64,000 bases of DNA from Thalia democratica (GCA_965202585.1 OZ241833.1:52886001-52950000), one strand, 5' to 3'; shown: positions 848-53,300, numbered from the stretch's first letter. Numbers and translations are program-made. Notes: generated by a model from the sequence alone, not told the origin.

Positions 848-849
848 GT

Positions 850-7979: not shown

Positions 7980-8385
7980 CAGAATGACACAGCGACAAAA
8001 TGACACGGTCGTCAAATAGACACGGTACGTCACTTTGACACATCGACAAAATGACACGGTGCGTCGCTTTGGCACAGCGACAAAATGACACGGTGCGTCA
8101 CTTTGACACATCGACAAAATGACACGGTGCGTCACTTTGACACATCGACAAAATGACACGGTGCGTCACTTTGGCACAGCGACAAAATGACACGGTGCGT
8201 CACTTTGGCACGGAGGGTCACTTTGGCTCAGCGACAAAACGACACGGTGCGTCACTTTGGCACGGAGGGTCACTTTGGCACAGCGACAAAACGACACGGT
8301 GCGTCACTTTGGCGCGGAGGGTCACTTTGGCGCAGCGACAAAATGACACGGAGGGTCACTTTAGCACAGCGACAAAATGACACGG
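7980..8385 (+). repeat. Left arm minisatellite, ~34-bp unit GACACGGTGCGTCACTTTGGCACAGCGACAAAAT with 17-bp sub-units
   Basis: Directly visible tandem copies with no unique spacers. Confidence 0.95.
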
Positions 8386-9909: not shown

Positions 9910-10280
9910 CTATAGTGACGCACCGTGCCTAAGTAACGCACCGTGTCATTTTGTCGCTGTGCCAAAGTGACCCTCCGTACCAAAGTGACGCACCGTGTCG
10001 TTTTGTCGCTGTGCCAAAGTGACCCTCTAAGCCAAAGTGACGAACCATGTCATTTTTTCGTCGTGCCAAAGTGACCCTCCGTGCCAAAGTAACGCACCGT
10101 GTCATTTTGTCGCTGTGCCAAAGTGACGTACCGTGTCATTTTATCGCTGTGCCAAAGTGACCCTCTGTGCCAAAGTGACGCACCGTGTCATTTTGTCGCC
10201 GTGCCAAAGTGACCCTCCGTGTCAAAGTGACGTACCGTTCCAAAGTGACGCAACGTGTCATTTTGTCGCTATGTCATTCT
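9910..10280 (-). repeat. Right arm minisatellite, reverse complement of 7980-8385
   Basis: Units ATTTTGTCGCTGTGCCAAAGTGACGCACCGTGTC. Confidence 0.95.
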
Positions 10281-11299
10281 GACACCCACCCCTTTCAAGT
10301 GTGTATGAAATAGATTGAATAGTTAGTTCTATCATATATTTTTAGCTGACAACCTTTGTTAGTTTTACCAAAAGTTTCTATATTTTCATAATAATGTCAC
10401 AAAACTTGAATTAGTTTTACAAAACATTTCAATATACATTAGTTAACCATTTTTATTCGTCAAACTATTAATTTTGATAGTAAATTTGATAAGCTTTATA
10501 CTGAAAATAAATCAACATTTATACAAACATTCTAGCTATCAAGGCTTTACAATTCTCATCTTAAATAGAAAAATCAATTAAACTTGAAGAAGTTTGTTAA
10601 ACTTATTCTGAACTACACTGTATCATCCTTATTTTATTAAGTATTAGTATAAAACACTGATACTAATCAAAATCAGTGTTCTATACTAATACTTTTCAAA
10701 TAAAAAATACACTAGTCTGCTTAACTCATTTTAACAAAAACAAAAAAGTTTTATAGCACAGATAAAGTAAAAGTAATACTTTCTTGATTATCTAAAGGTA
10801 AAAAATTAATAAAAAAAAATGTATTTTTTGTTTGTTAAGCCTAAATTTTTACATTAAGTGTAGTTCTAAATCTATTAACTATTTTACTTTGTTTAATGAA
10901 AGTTAATAGTAGTTTAAATTATAAAAAGATCAATTGAATTGTCTAAATCGTTTTAAATGACATGACTATGCATTAAAATGTTTTACGTAATAGTTTAACA
11001 TTTATAAGTTATGATTGGTGTTACAACTATTTCTTAAATTATTTTTCAACAAAAGCTTCAAGATTTTCAAATTAAAAATAATTTAGTCTTACAATAAATT
11101 AAAATTTTGATTAAAAATATAGTTTTTAACAGGATAAAAAATGCAGCAAAGTTTTAAAGATAATTAAAAACTTAATACAGTTTTTAAACGTGGTTAATTT
11201 ATTATGTTTATAGATTTAGTAACTTTTTTTTTAAATCACAACATAAAATAACAAAAAAAAGATATTGTGTAATACAAAGATATAATTTTTGTGAACTTT

Positions 11300-14200
11300 T
11301 TTTTTCTTAAATATCTGCTTATTATTATAAAAATCATCAATATTTTATATAGAAATAAGCTCACAATTTTTTTACTGTTTTTAAAGTACAAAATATATTA
11401 ATCCAGCAATTAATATGTGTATTTGTCGTTGTTTATTTCTAAACTTTTGACAGAATCAATTTTTCTAAGTAAACATCGGCGAAAGTCAATATAGCCAAAG
11501 CCTGGACTTCCGTATGCCGTGAGACAAGCTCAATTATAGCATAAACTTTTGACCGATTATATGATCAGACCATAATCCTTCGGTAAACTGAAACTCGAGT
11601 TTCGTTCTTATTGAAACTCTTCAGTCAGCCGCAACCAAACAACTTGCAGTTTAAAATCTACAAACGGTTTATAATGTTTTACTAACAAATCAATCGAAAT
11701 AACAATCAGTTGTAACGTAATAATTTAAAGTTGTTACGTAATAATGTGATGTTGATTAAAGATTTGAGATCATCACATGGACTGTTGCAGTCTAATGATT
11801 TTTGAATGAAAGCGTAAAAACATATCAGCTTTGCTGGTTATGGCATAATAATTACTAGAAAAATATAAAAAATATTTATAAAAACTTTATCAAAGTTTTT
11901 TTCATACGTTTGATTAAGTAAACGTAGAAAAAAGAATATTATTTAACCAATTATTTTTTTCTGTTTTGTTTTGTTTTAAATGACTGTAAATAAATTATGC
12001 ACTAATATTTGTTAGTTTAGTTTATTTCTAAAGTTTATTAGATTTTTGTATGTATGTAACTTTTTTGTAGTTACAGAATTAGCAGTATTCATTTATTAAA
12101 GAGTTTTTTTTTAAATCTATCTTATAGAGTTTTCACAAAAAGTTATTTTAAATGTTGATATGTAATAAAAAAGTATAAATTCGAGAAAGCTCGTGCGCTG
12201 ATGGTTTTAATGTTTTTATATAACTTATAATTTTTAAAATTATACTTTTTAAGTAGTAGTTATAATTTTAAATAATCTGAAAATAATGTCTGGTTTAATT
12301 TAGAATAACAAAAATCTAAACTTATGACAAGAGCTCGATTTTTTACCTTCAAAATAAATATACAAATAAGTTTTAGCTATTTTACAATAATTCAATACCA
12401 TAATTTTTTTTTTAAACATATTAAACTTACTTATTAAAAGACTGTTTAAAGGTAGGTATGCTTTTTAAAAGCCTTATATGCTTATGGTACCTGTATATAT
12501 ATAATGCTTATAAAATTCACAAAGATATTATTCTATCAAAACGTAATAATGTAACATTTATAAGTTATGATTAGCGTTAAAACTATTTGTTAAGTTGTTT
12601 TTGAACAAAAGCTTCGTGTTTTTCATAGAAAAACTTATATAACTTTATAATAATTTTAAAGTTTCCTTAGATTTTGACTTAAAATTTTTTTTACATATCA
12701 AAAAATGCAGCAACGTTTTAATGACATTTAAAACTTTAATATAGTTTTTAAACATGGTTAACTCATAGTGTTTAGAAACTTAGTAACTTTATTTTAAATT
12801 CACAACAATAAACAGTAAACAATTTTATCGTTTTTGTGGTAATTTTTATGTTTGAAAAAATACCTTCTAATTCTTAAAGTCGTCAATATTAAAAAATAGA
12901 AATTTTATCACAACTATTTTTTGTTTTTACAGTACAAAATACTTAAATTCGGAAATTCATATATCCATTTTTCGTTGTTTATTTTCTAAAGTTTTAAAAA
13001 AATCAATTTAAAATAGAAACCATCGGCGAAAGTCAACAGAGCCAAAGCCTGGACTTCCGTATGCCGTGAGACAAGCTCAAGTTTAACATAAAGGTTTGAT
13101 TATACCGATTATATGATCAGATCATAATCCTTCGGTAAACTGAAACTTGAGTTTCGTTCTTATTGAAACTCATCAGTCAGCCGCAACCAAAAACTTGCAA
13201 TTATCAACCTTCAAACGGTTTATCATGTTTTTACTAATATATTATGTAAAACAGTATTCAGTTGTAACGTAACAATTCAAAGTTGTTACGTAACAATGTG
13301 ATGTTGATTAAATATGTGAGATTGTCACATGGACTGTTGTAATCTAATGATTATTGAATGAAAACGTAAAAACATATCAGCTTTGCTGGTTATGGCATAA
13401 TAATTACTAGTTAAATATAACAAACCTTTATTTAAAATAAATACTATATCAACAATTTATTTGTCTATAAAATTAATAAACGGATACTGTAATTAAGAAT
13501 TTTGTGTTTGAGTTTCTAAAAAATAATTTCAAGGGCGTTATCAAACACTTTCTATACGCTTAGAAAAAAGAAGATAATTTAACCAATTATTTTTTACTGT
13601 GTTGTTTTCTTTAAATGACTGTAAATAAATTATGCGCTAATGTTTCTTAGTTAAGTTAACTTTTAAGTTTATTAGACTACCGTTTGTATGTTATACTTTT
13701 ATAGTCACAAATTTAGCAGCAATCCTTAGTAAAAAAAAATTAAGTTTATCTGTATAAAGTTTTTACAAAAAGTAATTTTTAATCTTTATATTTAATAAAA
13801 GTTTTTAAATTCGAGAAAGTTTGTGCGCTGATGGTTAATTATTTTTTTTTGTTACTTCTAATTTTTTTGTTTAATTTTTTAACTTCTACTTATAATTTTA
13901 AAAATTCCGAAACTATTGTCTGCTAAGTTATAGTATAAAATCAAAGTTTTTGACCAGCGCTCGACATATTACTTTAAAATAAATCAACATAAAAGTTTTA
14001 GCTATTTTAAAACAATTAAATACCATTTTTTATTTATTAGACTTATTGAACTTACTTAAAAAAGATTATTTAAAGGTATGTATGCTTTTTAAAATCCCTT
14101 TAACTTTGTGGTTAATATATATTATTTATGAAATTCACAAAGATACTTTTCTAAGAATAAGTAATAGTGAAGTATTCATAAGTTATGATTGGCATCAATA

Positions 14201-17200
14201 CTATTTGTTAAGTTTTTTTAACAAAAGTTTCTGGTCCTTCATATTAAGATTGATATAACTTAATAATAATTTTAAAATCTACTTGGTTAAAAACTAACTT
14301 TTTACACATTAAAAAATGACATTTAATACCTTTTAAAAAGTTTATATAATTTTTAAACATGGTTAACTCATAGTGTTTAGACATTTAGTAACTTTATTTT
14401 AAATTCACAACATTAAACATTAACAAATTTTATTGTTTAATACAATGATACTATTCTTGTAGTATTTTTAAATTTGAAAAATATCTGCTAATTATTAAAG
14501 TCGTCAATATTTAAAAATAGAAGTTTTATCACAATTATTTTTTTGTTTTTACAGTACAAAATCCTCAAATTCGGAAATTCATATATCCATTTTTCGTTGT
14601 TTATCTTTAAAGTTTTACAACGTCAATTAAAAATAAAAAGCATCGGTGAAATTCTGTAGAGCCAAAGCCTGGACTTCCGTATGCCGTGAGACAAGCTCAA
14701 GTTTAACATAAAGGTTTGATCATACCAATTATATGATCAGACTAAAATCCTTCGGTAAACTGAAGCTCGAGTTTCGTTCTTATTGAAACTCGTCAGTCAA
14801 CCGCAACCGAAAAACTTGCAGTTTTCAACCTACAAACGGTTTATCATGTTTTACCGTTATGTTATGTAAACGTTTATTCAGTTATTACGTAATAATGTGA
14901 TGTTAATTAAAGATGTGAAGTTGTAACAAGGACTGTTGTAGTCTAACGGTTGTTAAATGAAAAATATCATCTTTTCTTGAAATGGCCAAAATAACTACTT
15001 GAAAAACATAAACAAACTTTTATTTAAAATTAATACTGTATCTATAATTTAGTTGTTAAAAAAATTAAAAAAACGAATACTGGAATTTAGATTTTTGTGT
15101 TTGAGTTTCAAATAAATAATTTTAAGGGCGTTATCAAAGTTTTTTATATGATTGATTAAGTTCACGTACAAAAAAAAGAAAATCATTCAACCAATCATTT
15201 TCTATTGTGTTGTTTCATTAAAAATGCCCAGACTAAAGTTATTTGTTAGCTTACTTAATTTGTAAAGTTTATGAAGTTTTTGTTTGTATGTGACAGTTTT
15301 GTAGTTACAAAATCAGCAGTATTTGTTAGTAAAATTATATTAAACGCTTTTCTTCATAAAGTTTCACAAAAATTTATTTTAAATGTTAATATGTAATAAA
15401 AATGTTTAAACATAAACAAATTTGTACGTTGTTGGTTGTTTTCCAATTGTATATCTGTTTTAACACTTCTAATAGGTAAACTTGAAGTTCTAGTTATAAC
15501 TTCTAGTTATAATTTTAAAAGTTGTCAAGCCTATATTCGTTTTAGTTTTATAATAACTAAAAATCTAAATTTTTGACAAACGATCAACTACTTATTTTCA
15601 AAACAAGTTATGCAAAACAAATGAACTTGAGCTACTTTATAACAACTAGTTCTATTTATTTATACTGTTATACGAAGGTTTTTCAACGTATTTATATACC
15701 ATCACAACTAAGAATTCATAAATTTAGGTTACTTATTTTATTTCATATTTTATTTTACAAACGTGTTCAAAACTGGTTTTGTTCTCAAGTGGTAAGTGTT
15801 AATAAAACTTGTCGTTTTAGTTGCATACGCTGTCAAAACTCTGACATATTTAAAATTTTTTAAGTTTTGAAACGATGTAAACAAAGGGAACTCTACAGCC
15901 TGGAATCAATATTGATTGAAGAAGAACGATTTGAGTAAAATACGCAAATAGTATTATATAAAAAGCAAAACTTTTAACAAACTATTAATTAATATATAAT
16001 TAATTGTGCTTTACTTTTTTATTTAAAAAAAATTGCATACATTTGAATATACCTCATACTATAAACTTATCTTTTAAACACTTTAACCAATTTGTTTTTC
16101 AAGTTTATTTAACATTAACCACTTTAGAATGAAACTAATATAGTTTTGAAAACGTTTGTGAAATGAAATACAGTAACTTCTCGCATCTTTACGCATTCGT
16201 GACATTACGCACTCTCGTTTAGTTACGTATTTTAGAATTCTAAAAATTAAAAATTAATTTATTTTAAATATTGCACAAATTAGGTTATTGTATATTTTTA
16301 ATTTATAATTTGTTTTTAAATGCTAACTCACCTCTCTATCTTCAGACTTTGCAAACTTTGTAAAAAAGTTGTAGTAACATAAACAATTTTTATTAAACAT
16401 TTTTCTTATATTTTATATATTTCTGTTCAAAAGAAGAAATCCATTACAGCACCATATGCATATTTTTGTAAAAGGCTATAGAAACAAATTTTTATCTAGA
16501 CACCACACCATTTTTAACTGTAAACAAATACTTAATTGTAAATTGAATTTGCTAAGTAGAATAGAACATAAATGTTAAGTATCAAATAAGTCACATATAA
16601 ATAAAGATTAAAAAAAAATCTACTTATTATTAAAATTAGTAAAATTTTTCTACAAGTATTATTATTTTATTTAAATTTATATCCTTTTATTTTAATATAT
16701 GTATAGTTTTATCTTTTGTCTTCATATTTATAACTAAAGTAAACAAATTGTTAAAAGTGGAAAAAATCCTCAGTCTGCTTGTAACTAGAAGCAATATAAA
16801 AAAACAGCAATTTGTATATTATATCTGCAATTTGCAATTTGTATATATATAAAGTATATTTGGTATCTCCCGTATCTTTACGATCTCTCATATCTTTACG
16901 CACTTTATCTGTGGGCAAAATGTGCATAAATAAGCGAGAGGTTACTGTATATTAAATTGTGTAACATCTACATATTTAATTGCAAATGGTATATAAATAT
17001 ACTTGTGTAAACATTAAACTTATTATTTAGAGACTATTTAAGAGTAGGTATGTTAAATACCCTGTAACTTTATGGTATTAGTATATATATACATATATTA
17101 ACTACAAATTCGCAAAGACGTATTTCTAAAAAGTCTGTCCTGCATAAAAATTTTTCTGGTAAATCTAGATCAAAAAAACGCAGATAAAAAACGTGCCAAA

Positions 17201-19400
17201 CCCCTTTTTGAAGCTATTTGTCTCAGATGTTTTAGAAATATAAATAAATTTGTTGTGTTTTCTGCAGAAACTTAATATCTTATACTTTAAGCTGTAACAT
17301 TAAACAAGAGACATTTTTTAAAGTTTGATACACGTTAAGATAAAGTTTAATTATTAGTTTCGATTTGAGATACAAAAAATATTATAAAATATACCACAAT
17401 TGATAGACTTACAGTTACTCTAGGTGTGATAAATAAAGTACCAAAACTTGGATCTTTAAACATCACTAACAGTTTATTTGATTTACATATGTTTAGGCTA
17501 GGTTTGTAATTAAAAATATTCTTCTGAATCTTAACTTAGTTATATAGAATTTGTTTAGCATAGCTAAAAACAAAAATAAATTATTTTTGTTTTTGTTACA
17601 GTTTAGATAGTTTAAATAAATTTACGTAGTTTTGTGGTTTTTACTTAAAAGTTTGAACATTTTTAAAGAATCAAAAGTAGTTTACATTTTTTTGTACCTT
17701 TGCTTTTGATTGTTTGATCCAGCAATTTTAATTACTATAGTTTATAGAACGACAAATAAACACGCTTGGAATATTTGGTCCTATAGTTTTCAAATATGGT
17801 TAGTTTATAATGTTTACAGGTTTAGTAGTTCTAATTTATAGATACAACACTAAATATTTAAAGAATATTATTGTGTTATACAAAAATATAACTTTTGTGG
17901 TGTATTTTTAATTGGAAAATATCTGCTAATTTTAAAAGTCATCAATATTTTATTATACAAATCTACTCACAAATTGATTTTTTCAAATTACGAAATACAA
18001 TAATCCGGCAATTCATATATCCATTTTTCGTTGTTTATTTTCTAATGTTTTAAAAAAAATATTTTTTTTTAAAGAAAACATCAGCTAAAGTCAATATAGC
18101 CAAAGCCTGGACTTTCGTATGCCGTGAGACAAGTTCAAGTTTAACATAAAGGTTTGATCAATTCGATCATCAGAGCCTTCGGTAAACTGAAACTCGAGTT
18201 CCGTTTTTATTGAAACTCTTCAGTCAGCCGCAACCGATAAACTTGCAATGTTCAACCTACAAACGGTTTATCTCGTTTTACTAATATACTATGTAAATGT
18301 TTTTTTTCAGTTTTAAGTTAATAATTTAAAGTTGTTACGTAATAATAAGATGTTGATTAAAGATTTGAGATTGTCACATGGACTGTTGTAGTCTAATGAT
18401 TATTGAATGCAAACGTAATAAATATATCAGCTTTTCTAAACATAGCCAAAAAACTACTATAAAAATTTGAAAAAAAATTATTTAAAACCAATCCTTAGTT
18501 GTTAAACAAATTAAAAAACGGAAGCTGTAAATTAAGTTTTGTACTTTTGTTCCCAATTAATAATTATAAGGGCGTAAAAGAACTTCATACGCTTGATTAA
18601 GTAAACGAAGAAGAAAGCAGATCATTCAACCAAATATTTTCTTTTGTGTTTTTTCATTTTAATTATACGCAATGAATTAATGGGCTAATATTTTTTAGTC
18701 TAGTATTAGTTGAATTGTATAGTTTATGAGATTTCGTTTATATGTAAAATTTTTGTAGTTACATAATTAGCAGTATTTGTTAGTAAACAAATTGTTTATA
18801 GTTTATCCTTATAAAGCTTTTACAAAAGTAATTTTAAATGTTAATATGTAGCAAAAAAGTTTAAACTTGAAACAATTTGTACATTGTTCGTTATTTTCCA
18901 ATTGATTACCTGTCTAAACACTTGAAACATGTAAACTTTTGTAGTTATAATTTTTTAATTTCTGTAATCTAAATTTGTAATAGTTTTATTAAAACAAATA
19001 TCTAAGTTTTTAACAAACAATCTGCTTATTATTTTTAAAACAAGTTATACCAAACAAAAATACTTAAGCTGTTTTATAATATATAATTAATTTACTTATA
19101 CTATTATAGTAAGGTTTTTAAACGTGTTTATATACTATTTGCAACTAAGTATGTAGAAGTTACATATTTTATTTTATATTTTATATCACAAACATTTCAA
19201 AACTAGTTTTATTCTCAAGTGGTAAACTTTAAATGAACTTAAAATAATTTGTTGTTTTAATTGCACACGCTGTCAAAACTCCGACATAGTTTAAAACTTT
19301 ACAGCCTAGAATAAATATTGATTCACAAAGAAAGATCTTAGTTAAATACGCAAATAGCATCAAATGGAAAAGCAAAACTGTTAGCAGATTTAATATTTAA
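11300..19400 (+). repeat. Array of ~1.55 kb AT-rich units upstream of gene 1, each with a conserved ~200 bp core (cores at ~11474, 13021, 14641, 18079)
   Basis: Core GCCAAAGCCTGGACTTCCGTATGCCGTGAGACAAG..CCTTCGGTAAACTGAAACTCGAGTTTCGTTCTTATTGAAACTC.TCAGTCAGCCGCAACC recurs with spacings of 1547, 1620 and 3438 bp. The flanks are also homologous but more diverged. Confidence 0.9.
16171..16947. mobile_element. Tc1/mariner-pogo-like MITE, 777 bp
   Basis: TA|CAGTAACTTCTCGC ... GCGAGAGGTTACTG|TA. The empty site GAAATGAAA-TA-TATTAAAATGTG is present in the inverted arm at ~50500-50525. Confidence 0.85.
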
Positions 19401-19656
19401 AATATCTTTGTTTAAGTTAAACTATTTTACTCAAGTCAAAAAAAACAGAAATAAAATTTAAATAGCTAGATAATATAAATTCTTTTACCTTAAAACTTAG
19501 AACACTGAAACGGGTTTACTTTTTTTAAATTATAGTAAAATGGAAGACTAAACTTTCAATATTATAATAAATTTAAGTATTAATAAAATATTTATTTCAG
19601 AAAATAAAAGTTTCAATACTTAATTTACCTTATAATAGTATAAATAAAATAAAAAA

Positions 19657-22440: not shown

Positions 22441-23440
22441 ATTCAAGGGAATCAAAAACCAACCATCAAACGAAGCTAGTTTGCAAATAAGAAACAGTCC
22501 AAACCCTTATTTCTTGATAATAGGCCCAGCTGGTGCAGGAAAAACTACTCTGAGTAAAAGAGTAGTTCTGTCAACATTTAATAGCAATAATTATGCGTTT
22601 TTTATTCCCCTTGCTTTCATTGACCCTAAAAAACCGATTGATTTGAAATATCTTATTTTTACTTTGGGGTTATTGTATTTTTCAAGTGATATTAAGTTTA
22701 CTGAAAACCAACTGAATGTAGCTTTTGCCTGGTTATTAGCCAACCAACATAAAATAACCATAGTTCTTGATGGTTTGGATCAGGCTTGATTTTCTTTACA
22801 GAACTGTAAAGCTCCTGCAGAAATAGATGTTCACAAGAAATACTTAGCTTCTGATTTATTGAATTTGATATTAGCACGAAAAGTTTTGACTAAAGTACGT
22901 CTTATTCTAACTTCAAGACCTCATTCAATACTAAACTTTGAGGAAGGCATTCAACCAAATTATGTTTTGTATCTTGATGATCTATTTGAAGGCGATATGA
23001 AAAAGTTATTTCGTTTTTATATTAAAACCAAATATGTTGACGAAAATTTAAATAAACTTTTAGAAAAGTCTCCAAAAATCCAGCAGTTAACTTTTTGTCC
23101 TTTGTTTTTAAGATTGTTTTGTCATTTATACGAAATAGTTGGTGATGAAATTTGGAAAGTAGTTAGTTCAACAGCCAGTCTGTTTAATGAGCTTCTTAAT
23201 CGTCTACAATGTTGCGCTCATAAGGGCAGCCAAATAGACGGAGATGTAGTTATGACAAAACTCTCAAAACTTGCTTGCAATAAGACTATGGAACGTTCGG
23301 TTGTAATCACGCAGAAAGATCTTTTGGAATGCCAAATCACACCAAATGAGGTCCAAGATCTCATGATAGGTGTGCATGGCAATTCAAACTCTGCATTAGT
23401 TGGACCAAGCCTTTTTTACTTTGCTCACCAAAGTATACAA
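22441..23440 (+). CDS. NACHT-domain exon of gene 1 (1000 nt, internal stop)
   Basis: P-loop GPAGAGKTT, DGLDQ, LILTSRPHS, FCPLFLRL, YFAHQSIQ (winged-helix F.H.S.QE motif completed by the next exon, EYL). Confidence 0.92.
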
Positions 23441-26400
23441 GTTAGTTTAACCAGTTTTTGTTACGTAGTTATAAGTTTTCTAAAGGTTTACTACATTTTA
23501 CAGCAACTATTCGACCACACAATAAAACTCAAAAAAATATCACATACTTTACTTCCGTTAAAATATTTACTAACAACTTAATAGTTTTCTTATTAGGTTG
23601 TACTTACTTAGTCATAAAAACTTGCTTTTTTTTTTCTAATTTTTACATTAGAAATGCAGTATAATGTTTTTAAATATTTTTAGCTAAAGTTTTAGAAATG
23701 ATTAACAAGTCGGAGAAATTTACTAATTTTTTACTTTTTAATACTGGATGAATAATTTTTTAGATATAGAAAAATTAAATAAACAAAAACATCTAGAAAA
23801 AAAAAACGTAATTCGTAGATAGCGTTTAATTTTGTAAAAGTGTAGCATTTTTTTGATAGGAATATTTAACAAGCCGATATGCGTGGGTGAGTTTGCCCAT
23901 CGAAAGATTTGAAGAGTTTTTAAAACTCATATTTCCCGAGCTTGATGGCGACCCAATTGAAAACGATGAATTTCAAGTTGTTCGTATGTTCGCTGTATCC
24001 CATGTCAACATTCTGCAATTTGGTTAGTTTTTAATTTGTAGTTTTTATTTTAGTTTACATTTTTCAGCATACTTTTCTACATTAGCTTATTAACTTTTTT
24101 CCTTTATTATACAACAAAAGTATCAAATCTTATAGGAGCCTAATAAACATTTGATTTTACTTAAAATATAACTTCATTTGTTAAATAATTGTTTTTATTA
24201 AAGACGGTATAGTTTAAAAATAATACAAACTAATTAGTTAAAAAAAAGTTCAAAGTTTTTTGAATGCTTCATTTTAGTAAAGCAACTTGAAAATTAAAGT
24301 ATAAATAAAATTACAATAGTTTTTAGGTTTTAAAACCATACGTATTATTAGTAGATACAGAACAACTACAAAAAAAGAAATTGAAATTTATTGAAAAATC
24401 AACTAAGTATATCATTGGTTGTCATGAAAAAATTGGAACTGTTGATGGTTAGTAATTTTGTTCAATTTTGTTTCGTTAAATTTTCTTGAAAAGTCTATTT
24501 TTATGTTTAATTCGATAAGTTTTTTAATTTTGTTTTATTAATCTTCTTAGTAACTTCAAAATAGACATAGTTTTTAAAAACCCTCTACACAAAACCTTTT
24601 AGTAAATAGATTTTAGAATGGTTAAAAACTATAGTATTTAAGGTTAACTGGTAAAACGTTTTTAGAATAATTAAAATTTTCTAAAGTTTTAATATTTATA
24701 CATCGTCAAAGTATTTATCATACAACATTCTACTTAAACTTGTTTGTATATTTGATACAGAGTTTCTCTAACGAGTTTAAATAAAACATTTTTTTTTCTG
24801 CTTTAGCAGACTTACTTTCTTCGTTTGAAGTTTTAATTATGTTGTAATAAATTTCATATATAATTATTAATACTATACTTACTTTCTTTGTTACTTTTAA
24901 CAGCTATTTTAGGAATAAACAAAGTTCGACTTTAGCACGCAACCAATAATATATTATATATATACAGGTATCTGTCATTCACATGTAATCAGAAATGATT
25001 TCAATGAAATTACTAATTCGATAATAATAAATCAATTGAAAGAAAATCTTCAAAATCACAAGCTTGATATTTGGACCGGCCATCACCAAATTACTAGTGA
25101 TTTAACATTTATCAAGAAATTTGTGAGTCAAATAGATAGGTTGGAAGTGGATTCTCCAGATTTAAATTCAAACGACATGGAAGAAATAAAAAACAAATTA
25201 TCAAGCTCAAATATTAAAGTTCGTTCTGTTGCTTAAGTATTAATTTTCCAAATTGTATTATATTATTTGACAGTGAAAAAAAACTAATTAAAAGTGTTGA
25301 AAAAAATTGTGTCAAATTCTTCTATAGTCAACTTCTGTTGACTTTAATTTACAAATAGTAAAAACTACAATTTCGTATAAACTTTTAAAAATGTAAAAGT
25401 AATATTTATAAAATTCGATTATTTATGATAAAAACAGTCTCTTCAATTTTTAAAAGGTACACTGTTATAGATAATGAAACTAATTTCTAAGTTATAAAAA
25501 TTACTGAATATTTATTGAAAGGATAATATTTAAAATCTAGTTATTAATAAAAGATGAACATAAGTTTAGCTGTTGAATTTATTTTAAACAAAAACATCTA
25601 AAGTTTCATATATCGAACAAACTTTATGAAAATAAAGTTAAAATCGATTGCAAGTTGATTTTATGAGTTTTATGTAAATGAATACAATAAAAATTTATAT
25701 TTTAAACTAACAGGTTGAATTATTTCATATGCGTTTTTATGATGTAAAGAAATACGATGAAGAATTACTTACAAGTTTCTTTGATGTCACAATTAAAATC
25801 GAAATTGGGAAATTTAGTTTTGTTATTGATGAGTCGCTTAGTAATGATGATGCGGAAATCATTTGTGCAAAAAGTTATGAAAAAGTCAGAAGCTTAAAAA
25901 CACAAAACATGATTTCTAGTAATGTTAGTTATTTTACCTAACTTTAATGACTTAAGTAATAACATTTGTTTTAGAATCTTGAAGCGTTTTTAATATAAGC
26001 TTTTTGTTTAAAATTTATTAAAACTACAGGTTACAATTGAAGTAAAAGCTTGGATACATAAATGGAATTTAATACTTGAAGCAAAACTAATTAAAGGACA
26101 ACCAACAATATTTAATAATCGGTTTGTTAATTATTTTTTTGAGTTTTTGTTTAATTTATTATTTGTTACAACGAATATAACTGAATTAATACTATTAAAA
26201 ACTTTATTAAGAAAGTTTTAATTCAAAAAAATAGGTTGGAAGTGAATTCTGAAGATTTAAATTCAAATGAATTCTACAACTTAAATTAATTAATACTATT
26301 TGAAGTTTTATCAACAAACTTTTAATTAAAACAAATAGGTTGAAAGTGGATGCTTATGATGTTTTGAATTCATACAGTGTGTTAGAAATAACAGAGTTCT

Positions 26401-40300: not shown

Positions 40301-43300
40301 ATCGGCATGTTAAATATTCCTATTGAAAATAGTATACTTTTATTAAGTTAAACGCTATCTATGAACTTGTTTTTTAATCTCCTAGCTGTTATTATTATTA
40401 TTATTTCTTTTATATAGTAATCATATAGTATCAAAAAGTAAAGCGTTAGTAAAATTTATCCGACCTTTTAACCGTTTCTAAAACTTTAGCTAAAAAAGTT
40501 TTAAAAAGTTATACTGTAGTTCTAATGTAAATATTAAACATATTTTTAGTAATTTTTATAAATAAGTAAATACAACTTAATACAAATATTTTGTAAATTG
40601 TTAGTAAATATTTTGAAGGGAGTAAAAATCTGTGTTTATTTTTTAATTTCCATGTATAATAAAATAATAACTACTCTAAATACTATAGAAAAATTTTTAG
40701 ACAATCTATTATTACGTAAGAAAAAACTGGTTAAACTAACTTGTATACTTTGGTGAGCGAAATAGAAAAGGCTTGGTCCTACTAATGCAGAATTAGCTTC
40801 GCCATGCACACCTATCATGAGATCTTGGACCTCATTTGGTGTGATTTGGCATTTTAAAAGATCTTCCTGCGTGATTACAACCGAACGTTCCATAGTCTTA
40901 TTGTAAGCCAGTTTTGAGAGTTTTGTCATTACTACATCTCCGTCTAGCTGGCTGCCCTTATGAGCGCAACACTGTAGACGATTAAGAAGCTCATTAAACA
41001 CACTGGCTGTTGATCCAACTACTTTCCAAAAATCATCACCAACTATTTCGTACAAATGACAAAATAACCTTAAAAACAAAGGGCAAAAAGTTAACTGCTG
41101 GATTTTTGGAGACTTTTCTAGAAGTTTATTTAAAATATTGTCAACATCTTCGGTTTTAATATAAAATCGAAACAGCTTTTTCATATCGTCATTAGATAGA
41201 TCATCAAGATACAAAACATAATTTGGTTGAATACCTTCCTTAAAGTTTAGTATTGAATGAGGTCTTGATGTTAGAATAAGACGTACTTTAGGCAAAATAT
41301 TTCTTGCTAGTATCGAATTCAATAATTCATAAGCTAAGTACTTTTTTTGAAAATTTATTTTTCTAGGAGCTTGACAGTTTTTTAAAGAAAATCTGGCCTG
41401 ATCCAAACCATCAAGAACTATGGTTATTTTGTGTTGGTTATGTAATAACCAATCAAAAGCTACACTCAATTGGTCATCTGTATACTTAACATCACTTGAA
41501 AAATACAATAACCCTAAAGTAAAAATAAGATATTTCAAATCAATCGGTTTTTTAGGGTCAATGAAAGCAAGGGGAATAAAAAACGCATAATTATTGTTTT
41601 CAAATGTTGACAGAACTATTCTTTTACTCAGAGTAGTTTTTCCTGCACCAGCTGGGCCTATTATCAAGATATATGGGTTTGGACTGTTCCGTATTTGCGA
41701 ACTAGTTTCAGTTTCAATTGACTCATAATCACTAGACTCGCCTTCACTAGAATCATAATCACTAGACTCACTTTCAGTTTCATTTGACGATTGGTTTTGA
41801 TTTCTATTAGATCTGTAAGTATGTATTAGTCATAAATTCGCTACACATCTTAAGATTTTAACGTCCAAAAGTTTTTATATAATAATTAATTAAATAATCA
41901 GTTTCGATAAAAACAAACTTTATATAAAAGTAAAACAACACTTTATACCTTTTTAATTTCATAAGTATGAAATTAGTGCTACTATTTAAAATAAGTAAAG
42001 ACTAATAAAATTGCTTTTTTAAACTTAACTTAACTATATTTACTTAAGTAATTTTTTACTATAAAGCTACCGGAAACCCCTAAAAACAGTCTAAGTTTTT
42101 ATGAATTAAATAAAAGTTTATTCAAATTCTAGCAAAACACAATAACAAACCCGACAACATCATCAAATTGAACTTTTTCAGCTCTTCTGTAAGCACTTCT
42201 TTGTTCTTCAAGAACTCGATATGTTCCATCTGCAAAAGCTGTATTCCTTCTGAAGTGATCTTCAGATAACTTGATGATGGGATGCACTATTGGCACATCT
42301 TGACTCATCTGAACAGTGTCAGGTTTCCCCATCGGATCAGAAAGAATACCACAATTCTTCTGTAAAACCTCTTTCATTTGTAGTATTAAACATCCAGCTG
42401 AAAATAGTTAATTTTTTTATGTTATTAGAAAAGCTGTTTTATAAAAAAACAATTCAGTTGTTTGTTGTTTAGTTATTAACTATATTAATGAAATAATTCA
42501 AAAATATTGGTTTAAAGTAGTTATCTCCGGCTATTTTATCAATTTTTGTAAGTTTTTAAGCTAGTTCACAATAAAAGCATCATGATTTTATTTAGTTTTT
42601 ATTAGATTTAATAAAATAATCTATATATTAGTGTCTTATAATATTTTTTTTTGTAAACCGTAAAAATACTTTGAATAGTGTAAAACAAATCAACAACAAG
42701 CAAATTTTATATGTTTTTGACATATACTAGAGTAAATACAAATCCTTTTAATGACCGCAGTACAAGTTTTTGCACTAAGAAATGGTTATTTAAGTATCTA
42801 CACTTGAAAACTGAATAAACCGAATACAATCATCAATCTACTAACGACAATTGAACGAAATCTTTTATGTTATAAGTAAACATAGTATAGGCCTAAGGAC
42901 ATATAGTTTTTGCACACATCCTAAACCTAAATAAACTCAAAGGTTAAGACAAATAGCTGATTTTAGGTTATCATCAAAACAGTTTAACTACATATTTTGA
43001 GCTTTTTAAAAGGTATCCAGACTTAGAGTAAAGCCTTGTCTTAGACGTGAAGTTTTCAATGGTAAAAATTTGCTCATGCGTATAATTTCAACACTCAACA
43101 AAACCTTTCTTTATTTTTGATAATTTGTACTTAAATATATTAAAGTTTAAGTTTATATTTTTATAAGATACTAGTAATAGTAAAACAATTAAAAATAACA
43201 ATTTGTTTTCTTACAATAATTATGCAACACGTCATACATAGTTTTTCACGAATTGTGTTATAACACGAAATTAAATAATTTCAACTTAAAATATTGCAAA

Positions 43301-47319: not shown

Positions 47320-50300
47320 CATCTAGTGACTTTAAAAAATTTTTGTTTTCTTCAAGCAGAAAGTTGTAAAATATTAAATATATTAATTTTTTTTTGTTTT
47401 AGAAAATTTATAAATACATGTTACTTAAGTTTATTTATAGTAATTATAAAAACTTTAGTATATTTTAATTGTGGTTAGTGTAATTTTTTAAGTTACTAAT
47501 CAAATGAATAAAATAAAAATGTATAACGGCTTAGTAATTTTTAAAAGTGCTGTTTTCTTATAAATAAAATTGAAGTAGTAGACATATTTTTGCCTTTCAA
47601 TAAGTAAATTAAACTTTGAGTGAAAAAATAAATTAAAATACTTTTTATATATATTTTATATGTAAATAATTTTTCAAACCATACTATTTGACGATTAAAG
47701 AATTTTGCTTTACGGAACATATGTTTTGGTTTTTTTTTTAATCTACTTTTCTCAATAAACTAATTTGTATTAATACCATAAAATTATAAGGTCATTAAAA
47801 AGCATACCTTTTCTAAAATAGTATTTATTTAATAAATTTAGTAATTACAAAATTTTTTTTAATATAATATATGCAACTAGTTATGTAGAGGTTAGTCATG
47901 TTATTTTATAATATATTTCAAAAACGTTTTCAAAACCATAATAACAGTTTAACTATTTAGTGATTAATGATAAATGAAACTGAAAACATTTTATTTGAGT
48001 GAAACATTTTGAAAATAAGTTTAAATTATTACGTATTAATAAATTTAATAAAGTACAGATTTTTAGAGTTTATGAATTGTAACTGAAGAAACAATATGTT
48101 AATTAACAAATTGTTTAGAGTTTTGCTTTTCCATTTAATGCTGTTTGCGTATTTATTTTAGGTGGTTCTTCTTTAATCAATATTGATTAGAGTATAGTTC
48201 GCTTTGTTTACATCAATGTCAGAGCTTTGAAATCAGTGCAACTTTAACGATAAACTACTTCAAATTCGTTTAAAATTTATAACTTGAGACTGAAACTAGT
48301 TTTGAAAACGTTTGTGCAATAAAATATTTTCAAAAATGAGTAAGCTCTACATACCTAGTAGCAAATATAAATATTTTTTTTTTTATTATTTTTTTTTAAT
48401 ATAAGTAGACCGTCTGTTAAAAATTTATCTTTTTGTTATTATAAAACTTGAACGAATATAGGCTTACCAACTTTTTAAATCATAACCGGAACTTCAAATT
48501 TTACCAGTTAAAAGTGTTAAAACATATATTAAAATGGAAAACAACCAAGAACGTACAAGTAGTCTCAAGTTTAATCATTTTTATAACATATTAACATTTA
48601 AAATATTTTTTTGTCAGCACTTTGTTAAAAATGAACTTGAAATATTTTTTTACTAACAAAGCTTATTACTTCTATAACTACATAAATGTCACAGACAAAA
48701 AAAAACTCATAAACTTCAAAATTCAACCAAACTAACATGTATTAGCGCAATTATTTCAACGCGCAATTATAATGAAACACAAAAGAAAAAGATTGGTTGA
48801 ATGATCTTCTTTTTTCTACGTTTACTTAATCAAGCGTATAAAAAATGTTAGATAACGCCCTTAAAATTATTTATTTGAAACTCGAACACAAAAATTCAAA
48901 ATAAAGGTTCCGTTTTTTAATTTGTTCAACAACCAAATTATAGATACAATATTGATTTTTTTTTATAATAATTAATTTGGCTTTGTTTAGCAAAGCTAAT
49001 ATGTTTTTACCCTTTTATTCAATAACCATTAGACTACAACAGTCCATTTGACAATATCATATCTTTAATCAACATCCCACTATTACTTAACACCTTTAAA
49101 TTATTATGTTACGACTGAAAATATTTCAAATGAATTTATAGTAAAATATCATAAACCGTTTGTAGGTTGAAAACTGCAAGTTTTTCGGTTGCGGTTGACT
49201 GACGAGTTTCAATAAGATCCAAATTCGAGTTTCAGTTTACAAAAGGCTTATAGTCTGATCATATAATTCGTCAAACCTTTATATTAAACTTGAACTTGTC
49301 TCACGGCATACGGAAGTCCAGGCTTTTACTCTATAGAATTTCACCGATGTATTCTTTAAAAAAAAAGATTTTATTAAACTTTAGAAAATAAACAACGAAA
49401 AATGGATATATGAATTGCTGGAATATTGTATTTCGTAATTTGAAAAAGTCATATTGTGAGTTGATATATATAATAAAATATTGATGACTTTTAAAATTAG
49501 CAGATATTTACCAATTAAAAATACACCACAAAAATTATATTTATGTATAACACAAGAATATTTTTTAAATATTTAATGTTGTATCATTAAATTAGAACTA
49601 CTAAACCTGTAAACATTATAAACTAACCATATTTGAAAACTATAGGATCAAATATTCTAAGCGTGTTTATTTGTCGTTCAATAAACTATAGTAAATAAAG
49701 TTTCTGGATCAAACAATCAAAAACAAAGGTACAAAAAAATTTAAACTATTTTTGATTCTTTAAAAATTTTCAAACTTTTAAGTAAAAACCACAAAACTAC
49801 GTAAACTTATTTAAACTATCTAAACTGCAACAAAAACAATAATAATTTGTTTTTGTTTTTAGCTATACTAAACAAATTCTATATAACTAAGTTAAGATTC
49901 AGAAGAATATTTTTAATTACAAACCTAGCATAAACATATGTTAATCAAATAAACTGTTAGTGATGTTTAAAGATCCAAGTTTTGGTACTTTATTTATCAC
50001 GCCTAGAGTAACTGTAAGTCTATCAATTGTGGTATATTTTATAATATTTTTTGTATCTCAAATCGAAACTAATAATTAAACTTTATCTTAACGTGTATCA
50101 AACTTTAAAAAATATCTCTTGTTTAATGTTAACGCTTTAAGTATAAAATATTAAGTTTCTGCAGAAAACACAACAAATTTATTTATATTTCTAAAACAAC
50201 TGAGACAAATAGCTTCAAAATAGAAGTTAGCACGTTTTTTGTCTGCGTTTTTTTGATCTAGATTAACCAGAAAAATTTTAATGCAGGACAGACAATTTAG

Positions 50301-53300
50301 AAATACGTCTTTGCGAATTTGAAATCATTATATGTATATATATACTAAATTTTGAAATCAATATATGTATATATATACTAATACCATAAAGTTACAGGGT
50401 ATTTAACATACCTACTCTTAAATATTCTCTAAATAATAAGTTTAATGTTTACATAAGTATATTTATATACCATTTGCAACTAAATATGTAGGTGTTACAC
50501 ATTTTAATATATTTCATTTCACAAACGTTTTCAAAACTATATTAGTTTCATTCTTAAGTGGTTAATGTTAAATAAACTTGAAAAACAATTTGGTTAATGT
50601 GTTTAAAAGATAAGTTTACAGTTTGACGTATATTCAAATATATGCAATTTTTTTTAAATAAAAAAGTAAAGCACAAATAATTATATATCAATTAATAGGT
50701 TGTTAAAAGTTTTGCTTTTTATATAATAATATTTGCGTATTTAACTCAAATCGTTCTTTCTCAATCAATATTGATTAAAGGCTGTAAAGTTCGCTTTGTT
50801 TACATCGTTTGAACACTTTAAAGTTTTAAACTATGTCAGAGTTTTGACGGCGTGTGCAATTAAAACGACAAATTCATTTTGAATTCATTCAACATTTACC
50901 ACTTGAGGATGAAACTAGTTTTAAACATGTTTGTAAAATAAAATATGAAATAAAATGAGTAACCTAAATTTATGAATTCTTAGTTGTGATGGTATATAAA
51001 TACGTTGAATAAATTTAGTATAATAGTATAAATAAATAAAATTAGTTGTTATAAAGTAGCTCAAGTTTATTTGTTTTGCATAACTTGTTTTGAAAATAAA
51101 AAGTTGATCGTTTGTCAAAAATTTAGATTTTTTGTTGTTTTACAACTAAAACGAATATAGGCTTGACAACTTTTAAAATTATAACTAGAAGGTATAACTA
51201 GAATTTTAAAATTTATCTGTTAAAAGTATTTAAAACAGATATACAATTTGAAAACAACCAACAACGTACAAATTTGTTGATGTTTAAACATTTTTATTAC
51301 ATATTAACATTTAAAATAAATTTTTGTAAAACTTTATGAAGAAAAGCTTTTAACATACTATTACTAACAAATACTGCTAATTTTGTAACTACAAAACTGT
51401 CACATACAAACAAAAACCTCATAAACTTTACAAATCAAGTAAACTAACAAATAACTTTAGTGTTTGAATTTTTAATGAAACAACACAATAGAAAATGATT
51501 GGTTGAATGATCTTCTTTTTTTTACGTGTAGTCAATCAACCGTATAAAAAACTTTGATAACGCCCTTAAAATTATTTATTGAAAACTCAAACACAAAAAT
51601 CTAAATTTCAATATCTGTTTTTTTAGATTTTAACAACTAAATTATAGAAACAGTATTAATTTTAAGTAAAAGTTTGTTTATGTTTTTCAAGTAGTTATTT
51701 TGGCCATTTCTATAAAAGCTGATAGTTTTCATTTAAAAACCGTTAGACTACAACAGTCCTTGTTACAACTTCACATCTTTAATTAACATCACATTGTTAC
51801 GTAACAACTGAATATTACTACATTAAAATTAAAAAACATTTACATAATATATTTGTAAAATATCATAAACCGTTTGTAGGTTGAAAACTACAAGTATTTC
51901 GGTTGCGGTTGACTGACGAGTTTCAATAAAAACGAAACTCGAGTTTCAGTTTACCGAAGGCTCTGATGATCGAATTGGTATGATAAAACCTTTATGCCAA
52001 ACTTGAACTTGTCTCACGGCATACGAAAGTCCAGGCTTTTGCTCTATTGACTTTTGCCGATGCTTTTTATTTTAAATTGATTTTGTAAAAACTTAGAAAA
52101 TAAACAACAGCAAATGACACATATGAATTTCCGAATTTGAGCATTTTGTACTGTAAGGACAAAAAAAAATTGTGATAAAATTTATATTTTTAAATATTGA
52201 CGACTTTAATAATTAGCAGATATTTTTTAAGTTTAAAAATACCACAAAAATAGTATAATTGTATTAAACAATAAAATTTGTTAATGTTTAATGTTGTGAA
52301 TTTAAAACAAAGTTACTAAATGTCTAAACACGATGAGTTAACCATGTTTAAAAATTATATAAACTTTTTAAACGGTTTAAATGTCATTATTTAATGTGTA
52401 TAAAGTTTGTTTTTAATCAAGGAAATTTTAAGATTATTGTTAAGTTATATCAATTTTAATATGAAAGACCAGAAACTTTTGGTAAAAAAAAGCTTAACAA
52501 ATAGTATTGATGCCAATCATAACTTATTAGTGCTACACTATTACTTATTATTAGTTTAGCATCTTTGTGAATTTCATAAGTAATATATATTAAATATAAA
52601 GTTAAAGGGATTTTAAAAAGCATACCTACCTTTAAATTTTTTTTTAAAGTAAGTTCAATAAGTTTAATAAATAAAAAATGCTATTTGATTGTTTTAAAAT
52701 AGCTAAAACTTTTTTGTTGATTTATTTCTAAAGTAATACGTCAAGTGCTTGTCAAAAATTTAGATTTTTTTTTCATTCTAAATCAAAAGCGGACACTTTT
52801 TGAGAAAATTAAAAATTATAAATAGAACTTAAAAAGTTAAACTTAGAAATTAGAAGTAACAAAAAAACTTGTAAAGCCATCAGCACACAAACTTTCTCGA
52901 TTTTAAATTTACACTATTATTACATATTAAAGTTAAAAATTACTTTTTGTAAAAACTTTATACAGATAAACTTAAAAAAGATTTTTTACTTTGGAATACT
53001 GCTAAATCTGTAACTATGAAAATATAACGTACAAACAAAAGTCTAATAAACTTTAGAAATAAACTAAACTAACAAACATTAGCGCATAATTTAATCACAG
53101 TCATTTATAATAAAACAACACAGTAGAAAATGATTGGTTAAATTATCTTCTTTTTTCTAAGCGTATGGAAAATGTTTGATAAAGCACTTGAAATTATTTT
53201 TTTAGAAACTCAAACACAAAATTCTAAAATACAGTATCCGTTTATTAATTTTATAGACAAATAAATTGTTGATATAGTATTTATTATAAATAAAAGTTTG

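What the first reader, a model, noticed from the sequence alone, without database searches (positions are those of the whole stretch)
11300..19400. Seven copies of a conserved, motif-dense non-coding core arrayed upstream of both NLR genes
Seen: four cores precede gene 1 and three precede gene 2 in the same orientation relative to the gene. The cores look better conserved and more GC-rich than the rest of the ~1.55 kb unit, and have stops in every frame. Each carries ACGGAAGT (ETS-like, 4 copies) or ACGAAAGT (IRF-core-like, 3 copies), AAACTGAAACT plus the palindrome GAAACTCGAGTTTC (ISRE-like half sites, also foldable into a ~40-nt hairpin), GAAACTC.TCAGTCA, and ~100-150 bp further RTTACGTAAY (PAR-bZIP/NFIL3/CEBP-type palindrome, 6 of 7 copies). 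Donor-like CCTTCG|GTAAAC and AAACG|GTTTAT sites also recur. Inference: a multiplied inducible enhancer or promoter module (dosage tuning by copy number), alternative non-coding first exons, or a tandem small-RNA gene array.
Basis: partly seen in the sequence, partly recalled or inferred. Interest (0 to 1): 0.7.

Follow-up and report, generated by a model that had tools for sequence, protein, structure and literature searches.

The report
Hammerhead ribozyme repeats beside NLR genes
The seven conserved "motif-dense cores" are copies of a self-cleaving hammerhead ribozyme domain from an abundant small mobile element (a retrozyme), duplicated along with the NLR gene cluster, so this is an ordinary repeat relic and probably not an immune-gene enhancer.

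Summary
There are seven cores, four at 11.5-18.3 kb and three at 49.1-53.7 kb. They are GC-richer than the spacers (38-42% vs 22%), better conserved, and in the same orientation relative to the two NACHT genes.

The interpretation mostly does not hold. Rfam matches a type I hammerhead ribozyme (HH9-like) in six cores, on the strand antisense to the genes. The seventh is a degenerate copy seen by alignment. Only RTTACGTAAY lies outside it.

That domain belongs to a genome-wide ~335-bp tandem and head-to-head retrozyme family (1,552-3,595 first-look candidates). This scan has already reported that family at several other places in this genome.

The 1.55-1.62-kb unit occurs only at paralogous NLR loci. 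A paralogue on contig C2 has a single copy between the same flanks, so the arrays probably grew by DNA-level tandem and inverted segmental duplication.

Three window copies and the C2 copy carry changes at conserved or essential ribozyme positions. All have an atypical GUU cleavage site and a competing hairpin. Pairs that match best across the inverted duplication show no extra conservation of the core.

Expression could not be tested. Interest is low: a new member of a known kind.

The parts
10292..19654 (-). Array 1. It holds irregular tandem repeats (2 full units of 1552 and 1620 nt, partial units, and one long unit of 3427 nt) with four ribozyme cores. It ends about 2.1 kb upstream of the gene 1 homology block.
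   Evidence: unit map; repeat families D7-D9, D13.
11569..11642 (-). Hammerhead w1. The catalytic core is intact (CUGAAGA...GAAA). Helix III is ACUCGAGU and the cleavage triplet is GUU, with cleavage predicted between 11592 and 11591.
   Evidence: HH9, 33.4 bits, E 1.9e-5.
13121..13194 (-). Hammerhead w2. The core is intact (CUGAUGA). The helix III palindrome is broken (ACUCAAGU).
   Evidence: 35.3 bits, E 4.8e-6.
14741..14815 (-). Hammerhead w3. The boxes are intact, but U16.1 is changed to C, which breaks the essential A15.1-U16.1 pair. It is probably inactive.
   Evidence: 25.2 bits, E 0.0085.
18169..18241 (-). Hammerhead w4. A13 is changed to G (GGAAC in place of GAAAC). It is probably inactive.
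   Evidence: 25.6 bits, E 0.006.
11471..11680 (-). The ~210-nt conserved retrozyme domain of copy 1: 89 nt 5' and 121 nt 3' of the cleavage site. It is the only part shared with the genome-wide ~335-bp family. The equivalent domains are 13023-13232, 14643-14852 and 18070-18279 on the - strand, and 49143-49352, 51857-52066 and 53467-53676 on the + strand.
   Evidence: query positions 121-330, 77-79% identity, many contigs.
47825..55035 (+). Array 2. It is an inverted paralogue of array 1 with the same architecture but one full unit fewer, and it holds three ribozyme cores.
49173..49247 (+). Hammerhead w5. It is degenerate: G12 is changed to C, and helix II and the outer part of helix I are broken. 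Rfam did not detect it.
   Evidence: absent.
51895..51967 (+). Hammerhead w6. The catalytic core is intact (CUGACGA).
   Evidence: 29.5 bits, E 3.4e-4.
53504..53578 (+). Hammerhead w7. The core is intact, but helix I is weakened by two G.A mismatches.
   Evidence: 29.3 bits, E 4e-4.
11733..11742 (.). RTTACGTAAY palindrome. It lies about 150 nt 5' of the cleavage site, in a conserved spacer block outside the retrozyme domain. Other copies are at 13285, 14884, 18334, 51796 and 53426.
22481..23581 (+). Gene 1 NACHT / NOD2_WH exon. It is interrupted by a stop between 22789 and 22859.
40636..41667 (-). Gene 2 NACHT / NOD2_WH exon.

Best explanation
Each core is the conserved ~210-nt domain of a non-autonomous retroelement of the animal 'non-LTR retrozyme' kind. 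It contains a type I hammerhead ribozyme and reads on the strand antisense to the NLR genes.

Inferred history:
1. One copy of a minor subfamily of this element came to lie in the spacer between tandem NLR genes.
2. That copy, together with about 1.3-2.5 kb of low-copy flanking DNA, was multiplied by DNA-level tandem duplication.
3. The array was then copied again with its NLR gene by an inverted segmental duplication. A third paralogue on contig C2 still has a single copy.

If the ribozyme strand is transcribed, the intact copies (w1, w2, w6, w7) could cut the RNA after GUU into pieces of about 1.55-1.62 kb. However, half of the eight copies carry changes at conserved or essential positions. 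All have a weak helix II and a competing hairpin. There is no sign of selection on the core since the last duplication.

The most likely present role is therefore none: these are decaying relics.

Shown: the ribozyme identity, the family membership of the core, and the restriction of the long unit to paralogous loci. Inferred: the order of events and the lack of function.
For: - Rfam HH9 hits on six cores, E 5e-6 to 8e-3, all on the strand antisense to the genes.
- Across 19 copies, the hammerhead structure is paired in 94% of cells, against 31-56% when the partners are slid. Compensatory UA<->CG changes occur in helices II and III.
- The same 210-nt domain occurs on most large contigs as ~335-bp tandem arrays and head-to-head pairs, with 1,552 and 3,595 first-look candidates.
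- The 335-nt monomer folds as a highly self-paired circle, z = -4.8.
- The genome holds hundreds of ORFs with a C-terminal GIY-YIG domain, up to 918 aa. The closest database homologues of one such ORF (857 aa) carry RVT_1 and GIY-YIG, the Penelope-like architecture.
- The spacer of the 1.55-kb unit is found only in the two window arrays, at C2:17.87 Mb and as a fragment on C6.
- The C2 locus is colinear with the window's NLR gene, the 7-kb segment X and both array flanks, but has one ribozyme.
- Unit lengths are heterogeneous and nested. Both arrays share the same irregular architecture.
- Changes at conserved or essential positions: A13G in w4, U16.1C in w3, G12C in w5 and G10.1U in the C2 copy.
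- The active dimer fold is 10-21 kcal/mol above the minimum free energy for window copies, against 0.3 kcal/mol for a canonical family copy.
- Core and spacer divergence are equal in the best-matched pairs.
Against: - In most between-unit comparisons the core has about half the substitution rate of the spacer, for A/T and G/C sites alike. This could reflect past constraint, gene conversion, or misalignment of the AT-rich spacer.
- Two pairs of consecutive units (w2-w1 and w6-w7) keep complete catalytic cores. One published working criterion for an 'active' retrozyme is met by this (preprint 10.64898/2026.07.22.740005).
- A partial copy of the spacer plus the first ~25 nt of the core sits on C6 with no NLR homology in the 15 kb examined. 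This hints at some mobility of the long unit.
- No empty site and no clear target-site duplication was found for the original insertion.
- All Rfam scores are below the HH9 gathering threshold. The canonical family copies are also below it, at 38.8 bits.
- No transcript or chromatin data could be obtained.
Confidence: 0.8

Rival explanations
1. The 1.55-1.62-kb unit is itself a genuine long-cargo retrozyme. Its RNA would be bounded by two hammerheads, cut out of a multimeric transcript, circularised and reverse-transcribed. The arrays would then arise by RNA-mediated amplification rather than DNA duplication.
For: - Every unit boundary carries a hammerhead, and there are consecutive complete motifs.
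- Homology to the 335-nt family ends exactly at the borders of that family's variable region, as expected if only the cargo differs.
- There is a partial copy on C6 away from any NLR homology.
- The unit RNA is somewhat more structured than shuffles, z = -2.3 with only 15 shuffles.
- The literature notes that ribozyme-flanked repeats can give circRNAs from 150 to more than 1000 nt (PMC7229834).
Against: - The whole unit occurs only at loci that are paralogous over many kilobases beyond the array.
- The C2 paralogue has one ribozyme between the same flanks.
- Unit lengths are 1552, 1610, 1620, 2714 and 3427 nt with nested structure.
- No head-to-head scars lie at the array ends.
- The ribozymes are a weakened variant, with a GUU site and a competing hairpin.
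Confidence: 0.12
2. The cores have been co-opted as a cis-regulatory module (enhancer or promoter) of the neighbouring NLR genes, with copy number tuning expression.
For: - Both arrays end about 2-2.5 kb from the 5' side of an NLR gene. For array 2 this holds once an element inserted between array 2 and gene 2 at 44369-47309 is discounted. That element is known only from an untested first-reader note.
- The core is less diverged than the spacer in between-unit comparisons.
- A second conserved block with TTACGTAA lies outside the retrozyme domain.
Against: - The motifs inside the core are explained by the ribozyme and recur in many non-NLR copies.
- There is no excess conservation in the best-matched pairs.
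- In the C2 paralogue the unit lies 3' of an NLR gene, and the 8 kb on its other side has no homology to the window.
- Gene 1 carries an in-frame stop.
Confidence: 0.06
3. The cores are a tandem array of some other small RNA gene, such as spliced-leader RNA, snRNA or a miRNA cluster.
For: The layout, a tandem repeat with a GC-richer conserved core, resembles SL-RNA or 5S arrays. This was my first guess on reading the sequence.
Against: Rfam finds nothing at gathering thresholds in the whole window. At relaxed thresholds the only recurrent match is the hammerhead.
Confidence: 0.02

Closest known systems
Animal non-LTR retrozymes (Cervera & de la Pena 2020, PMC7229834)
   Same: - Type I hammerhead with a 6-bp helix I, a 4-bp helix II and a 2-bp helix III capped by a palindromic tetraloop.
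- Non-coding and low in GC.
- The core is homologous to an abundant ~335-bp tandem family in the same genome, and that family's monomer folds as a compact circle.
- The genome also holds many Penelope-like ORFs.
   Different: - The repeat unit here is 1.55-1.62 kb (also 2.7 and 3.4 kb), not 170-400 nt.
- The unit as a whole is not dispersed.
- Three of the seven window ribozymes, and the C2 copy, are mutated at conserved or essential positions.
- The cleavage triplet is GUU, whereas the main family in this genome has GUC.
Hammerheads of Penelope-like elements and the head-to-head insertion form (Cervera & de la Pena 2014, PMC4209133; Craig et al. 2021, PMC8557442)
   Same: - A short palindromic helix III implies the ribozyme works as a dimer.
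- Family copies elsewhere in the genome show the tandem plus inverted 5'-truncated arrangement typical of Penelope-type insertion.
   Different: - No reverse transcriptase or endonuclease ORF lies in or next to the unit.
- Rfam found no hammerhead in the four 10-kb loci examined around Penelope-like ORFs.
- The window arrays themselves show no such insertion scars.
Rfam Hammerhead_HH9 (RF02275)
   Same: It is the best-scoring Rfam model, and the match covers the full model length with the same type I topology and helix I internal loop.
   Different: Scores of 25-35 bits are below the 52-bit gathering score because helix III has no real loop. There is no evidence of common descent with HH9.
Amphibian satellite 2 and Schistosoma Sm-alpha hammerhead satellites
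   Same: Tandem genomic repeats whose transcripts carry a type I hammerhead with a very weak helix III, cleaving efficiently only as dimers (PMC7229834).
   Different: Those are arrays of thousands of short monomers. Here there are seven copies 1.5-3.4 kb apart, which makes dimer formation within one transcript less likely.

Membership tests
Hammerhead ribozyme, type I | Catalytic boxes C3-U4-G5-A6-N7-G8-A9 and G12-A13-A14, plus the A15.1-U16.1 pair. | tested here: met
   All are present in w1, w2, w6 and w7. They are broken in w3 (U16.1C), w4 (A13G) and w5 (G12C). The variable base among copies falls on N7.
Hammerhead ribozyme, type I | Three helices around the core, open at helix I, supported by covariation. 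| tested here: met
   94% of cells are paired, against 31-56% with slid partners. Two pairs show compensatory UA<->CG changes across 19 family copies.
Hammerhead ribozyme, type I | Cleavage triplet NUH. | tested here: met
   All eight long-unit copies have H17 = U: GUU in seven, and GCU in w3, where U16.1 is changed to C. This is allowed by the NUH rule (own knowledge). The main family in this genome has GUC.
Hammerhead ribozyme, type I | Score at or above the Rfam gathering threshold. | tested here: not met
   The cores score 25.2-35.3 bits against 52. Canonical family copies also score below threshold, at 38.8.
Hammerhead ribozyme, type I | Self-cleavage activity. | not testable with these tools
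   Only thermodynamic prediction was possible. The active dimer fold is 10-21 kcal/mol above the minimum free energy in window copies.
Animal non-LTR retrozyme | Tandem repeats, each unit with a type I hammerhead. | tested here: inconclusive
   Every unit boundary has a hammerhead-derived sequence. Only w2-w1 and w6-w7 are consecutive complete motifs.
Animal non-LTR retrozyme | Monomer of about 170-400 nt. | tested here: not met
   Units are 1552, 1610, 1620, 2714 and 3427 nt.
Animal non-LTR retrozyme | Multi-copy and dispersed, with insertion scars (evidence of mobility). | tested here: not met
   This holds for the 210-nt core domain. It does not hold for the unit as a whole, which occurs only at paralogous NLR loci plus one fragment.
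Animal non-LTR retrozyme | No coding capacity. | tested here: met
   The longest ORFs in the arrays are 96 aa and 65 aa.
Animal non-LTR retrozyme | Expressed as linear and circular monomer RNAs. | not testable with these tools
I did not try another route.
Animal non-LTR retrozyme | Autonomous Penelope-like elements in the same genome. | tested here: met
   There are 567 first-look GIY-YIG candidates. ORFs reach 918 aa with a C-terminal GIY-YIG domain, often in head-to-head pairs. Homologues of one such ORF carry RVT_1 and GIY-YIG.
NLR cis-regulatory enhancer or promoter module | Slower evolution than the flanks in comparisons of equal age. | tested here: not met
   In the best-matched pairs the core diverges by 0.120 and the spacer by 0.139, p = 0.22.
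NLR cis-regulatory enhancer or promoter module | Specific and constant position relative to NLR 5' ends. | tested here: not met
   The C2 paralogue has the unit 3' of its NLR gene, and the 8 kb on the other side has no homology to the window. The core domain is common elsewhere in the genome.
NLR cis-regulatory enhancer or promoter module | Open chromatin, transcription-factor binding, reporter activity. | not testable with these tools
   No such data were available.

The most novel reading that the evidence does not exclude
The hammerhead-bounded 1.55-1.62-kb units may be transcribed on the ribozyme strand, for example by divergent transcription from the NLR promoters, since that strand points away from both genes. 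The transcript would then be processed into unusually long self-cleaved or circular RNAs. This would be either a long-cargo retrozyme that has captured NLR-intergenic sequence, or a domesticated non-coding RNA that acts on the NLR cluster.
Probability: 0.08. Interest if true: 0.6.

Novelty: new member of a known kind. Interest (0 to 1): 0.25.

Why it matters
The main value is as a correction. An apparent array of immune-type transcription-factor sites upstream of two NLR genes turns out to be the catalytic core and helices of a hammerhead ribozyme read on the wrong strand.

It also documents how a retrozyme fragment can be carried along and multiplied by the tandem and inverted segmental duplications that build NLR clusters. 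This gives useful markers for dating those duplications: the array has 1, 3 or 4 ribozyme copies at the three paralogous loci, and one array carries a later transposon insertion.

Only if the long units prove to be expressed and cut would it add something new, namely ribozyme-bounded RNAs about five times longer than typical animal retrozymes.

Tried and rejected
- My first guess from the sequence was a spliced-leader or snRNA gene array. I rejected it because Rfam at gathering thresholds finds nothing, and the only recurrent relaxed hit is the hammerhead.
- Search for the autonomous partner: Rfam found no hammerhead in four 10-kb loci around Penelope-like ORFs. None of the listed retrozyme hits lies near a listed GIY-YIG hit. 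The partner remains unidentified.
- Pfam did not see the reverse-transcriptase domain in those ORFs directly. It is seen only in their database homologues.
- Empty-site test: the C6 copy is not an empty site, because it contains the first ~25 nt of the core. Candidate target-site duplications around the cores are too short and AT-rich to trust.
- Fold z-scores for all three full units timed out twice. Only unit 1 was done, with 15 shuffles.
- Organism identity: the NACHT and Penelope-like protein homologues come only from unnamed ENA assemblies.
Full report
**Setting.** The window is very AT-rich, about 24% GC. It lies at C9:52,886,001-52,950,000 of an 802-Mb unnamed animal genome. It holds two NACHT/NOD2_WH genes. 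Gene 1 is on the + strand at 22481-23581, with an in-frame stop near 22790. Gene 2 is on the - strand at 40636-41667. A 7-kb direct duplication links 1-7250 with 27621-34201 at 93-96% identity.

**Checking the observation.** The palindrome GAAACTCGAGTTTC occurs six times with at most one mismatch, against none expected. A seventh, degenerate copy lies at 49.2 kb. Repeat finding and BLAST against a reference unit gave the following map:

| Array | Span | Ribozyme strand | Spacing between ribozymes (nt) |
|---|---|---|---|
| 1 | 10292-19654 | - | 3427, 1620, 1552 |
| 2 | 47825-55035 | + | 2714, 1610 |

- Both arrays have the same irregular layout: partial unit, about 420 nt, a 1.35-kb "other" segment, partial unit, one or two full units, partial unit.
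- The core is GC-richer (0.38-0.42 vs 0.22). It has 5-7% non-consensus cells, against 14% in the spacer.
- Neither array has an ORF of 100 aa or more.

**What the core is.** Rfam at gathering thresholds finds nothing in the window. At relaxed thresholds, four matches in array 1 and two in array 2 hit Hammerhead_HH9 over the full model length, with E-values of 5e-6 to 8e-3. All are on the strand antisense to the neighbouring NLR gene.
- "GAAACTC.TCAGTCA" is UGA-CUGANGA-GUUUC. Its variable base is exactly N7, the one free position of the catalytic box.
- "AAACTGAAACT" and "CCTTCG|GTAAAC" are the 3' strand of helix I.
- "AAACG|GTTTAT" and ACGGAAGT/ACGAAAGT lie in conserved sequence flanking the ribozyme.

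This architecture of a 6-bp helix I, a 4-bp helix II and a tiny palindromic helix III is the one described for most metazoan type I hammerheads, which cleave as dimers (PMC4209133; PMC7229834).

**Family context.**
- A 371-nt query around core 1 finds eight full-length matches, seven in the window and one at C2:17.87 Mb. It also finds many matches limited to query positions 121-330, at 77-79% identity, on most large contigs, with 1,552 first-look candidates. These include arrays with a 335-336-bp period and head-to-head pairs.
- A query from one such locus gave 3,595 candidates.
- The canonical family ribozyme is CUGAUGAG-UCC-UAAUAA-GGA-CGAAAC-CGGUC. The window copies belong to a minor subfamily whose helix II is GUUU/GAAC. 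That subfamily has about 23 matches within three mismatches, eight of them in the NLR loci.
- Across 19 copies the hammerhead structure is paired in 94% of cells, against 31-56% when the partners are slid. Compensatory UA<->CG changes occur in helices II and III.
- The 335-nt monomer, folded as a circle, is far more stable than shuffled sequence (z = -4.8), as reported for retrozyme circRNAs.
- The shared domain corresponds to monomer positions 249-335 plus 1-122. That is everything except the family's variable region.
- The genome also carries hundreds of ORFs with a C-terminal GIY-YIG domain, up to 918 aa, often in head-to-head pairs. The database homologues of one such ORF (857 aa) carry RVT_1 and GIY-YIG, the Penelope-like architecture.
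- I found no hammerhead beside the four such ORF loci examined. The autonomous partner is therefore not identified.
- Earlier notes of this scan describe the same 328/335-bp retrozyme family at several other places in this genome. None concerns this NLR-linked array.

**How the arrays arose (inferred).**
- The spacer of the unit is low-copy. It is found only in the two window arrays, at C2:17.87 Mb, and as a 1.4-kb fragment on C6.
- The C2 locus is colinear with the window in inverted orientation over more than 12 kb. It holds an NLR gene (NACHT), the 7-kb segment X at 90% identity, and both outer flanks of array 1 at 86-87%. It has only one ribozyme between those flanks. The arrays therefore grew in place, or C2 collapsed.
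- The shared irregular architecture shows that most of the array already existed before the inverted duplication that produced the gene 1/array 1 and gene 2/array 2 pairs. Afterwards array 1 gained a full unit (or array 2 lost one), and a 777-bp transposon inserted into array 1.
- Heterogeneous unit lengths, nested structure and restriction to paralogous loci favour DNA-level duplication over RNA-mediated amplification.
- The C6 fragment carries the spacer and the first ~25 nt of the core, with no NLR homology in the 15 kb examined. This is the main loose end.

**State of the ribozymes.**
- w1, w2, w6 and w7 keep every invariant position.
- w3 has U16.1C, w4 has A13G, w5 has G12C plus other changes, and the C2 copy has G10.1U.
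- All eight have U at position 17 (the triplet is GUU except in w3), where the main family has GUC.
- The helix III palindrome extends to GAAACUCGAGUUUC. This lets GAAACUC pair with the GAGUUUC that follows the catalytic box. That 7-bp hairpin is the minimum-energy fold of every window copy and buries the core.
- In homodimer folds the catalytically competent double hammerhead lies within 0.3 kcal/mol of the optimum for a canonical family copy. For the window copies it lies 10-21 kcal/mol above the optimum. These are predictions only.

**Is the core under selection?**
- In most between-unit pairs the core has 8-15% substitutions and the spacer 16-28%, for A/T and G/C sites alike.
- In the three pairs that match best across the inverted duplication (w3-w6, w4-w5, w2-w7), core and spacer have the same age. 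There the rates are 0.120 and 0.139 (p = 0.22).
- I read this as no detectable constraint since that duplication. The older excess may come from past constraint, gene conversion, or poor alignment of the AT-rich spacer.
- A second conserved block with RTTACGTAAY lies about 150 nt 5' of the cleavage site, outside the retrozyme domain. I have no specific explanation for it beyond shared ancestry.

**Verdict.**
- The cores are hammerhead-ribozyme domains of a known kind of mobile element, multiplied passively with the NLR cluster.
- The enhancer and first-exon readings are not supported. The "small-RNA array" reading is right only in the sense that the conserved part encodes a structured RNA.
- A small chance remains (about 0.08) that the long ribozyme-bounded units are transcribed and processed, which would be unusual for animal retrozymes.

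Noticed in passing
window 16171-16947: A 777-bp non-coding transposon with terminal inverted repeats (CAGTAAC.TCTCGC...) and a TA target duplication, which points to a Tc1/mariner-type MITE. It is inserted in array 1, and the matching site in array 2 (about 50504-50511) is empty. The family is very abundant, with 4,365 first-look candidates at 79-87% identity.
   Followed up: partly
window 7975-8401 and 9873-10303: Two blocks of an 18/34/52-bp GC-richer satellite (units built on CACGGNGCGTCACTTTGG) lie in inverted orientation around a 1.5-kb segment, just beside array 1. The same satellite sits beside the single unit at the C2 paralogue.
   Followed up: no
window 1-7250 vs 27621-34201; C2:17870700-17877951: A 7-kb segment ('X') follows each NLR gene. 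The two window copies are 93-96% identical and the C2 copy is about 90% identical. The NLR cluster is a mosaic of segmental duplications of different ages.
   Followed up: partly
window 22789-22859: The gene 1 NACHT domain is split by a stop between two ORFs (22481-22789 and 22859-23581), so gene 1 may be a pseudogene or have an unusual intron here.
   Followed up: partly
window 35642-36151: A 36-bp tandem repeat of 14 copies at 96% identity lies inside a 199-aa ORF with no Pfam match. A 54-bp repeat follows at 36552-36749.
   Followed up: no
L047 / C6:29581723-29583180: A 1.4-kb copy of the unit's spacer plus the first ~25 nt of the ribozyme core, then unrelated sequence. The 15 kb examined has no homology to the window's NLR genes. 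Its origin is unclear: a partial duplication or an aborted retrocopy.
   Followed up: partly
L045:5927-5988 (C2 paralogue, inside the unit spacer): A weak Rfam match to the MIR8001 microRNA precursor (38.7 bits against a gathering score of 90, E 4.7e-4). It is probably a chance hairpin in AT-rich DNA.
   Followed up: no
L048-L051 and the list: Long ORFs with a C-terminal GIY-YIG domain (779-918 aa, Penelope-like) are numerous and often sit in head-to-head pairs 1-3 kb apart. Rfam found no hammerhead within the four 10-kb loci examined.
   Followed up: partly
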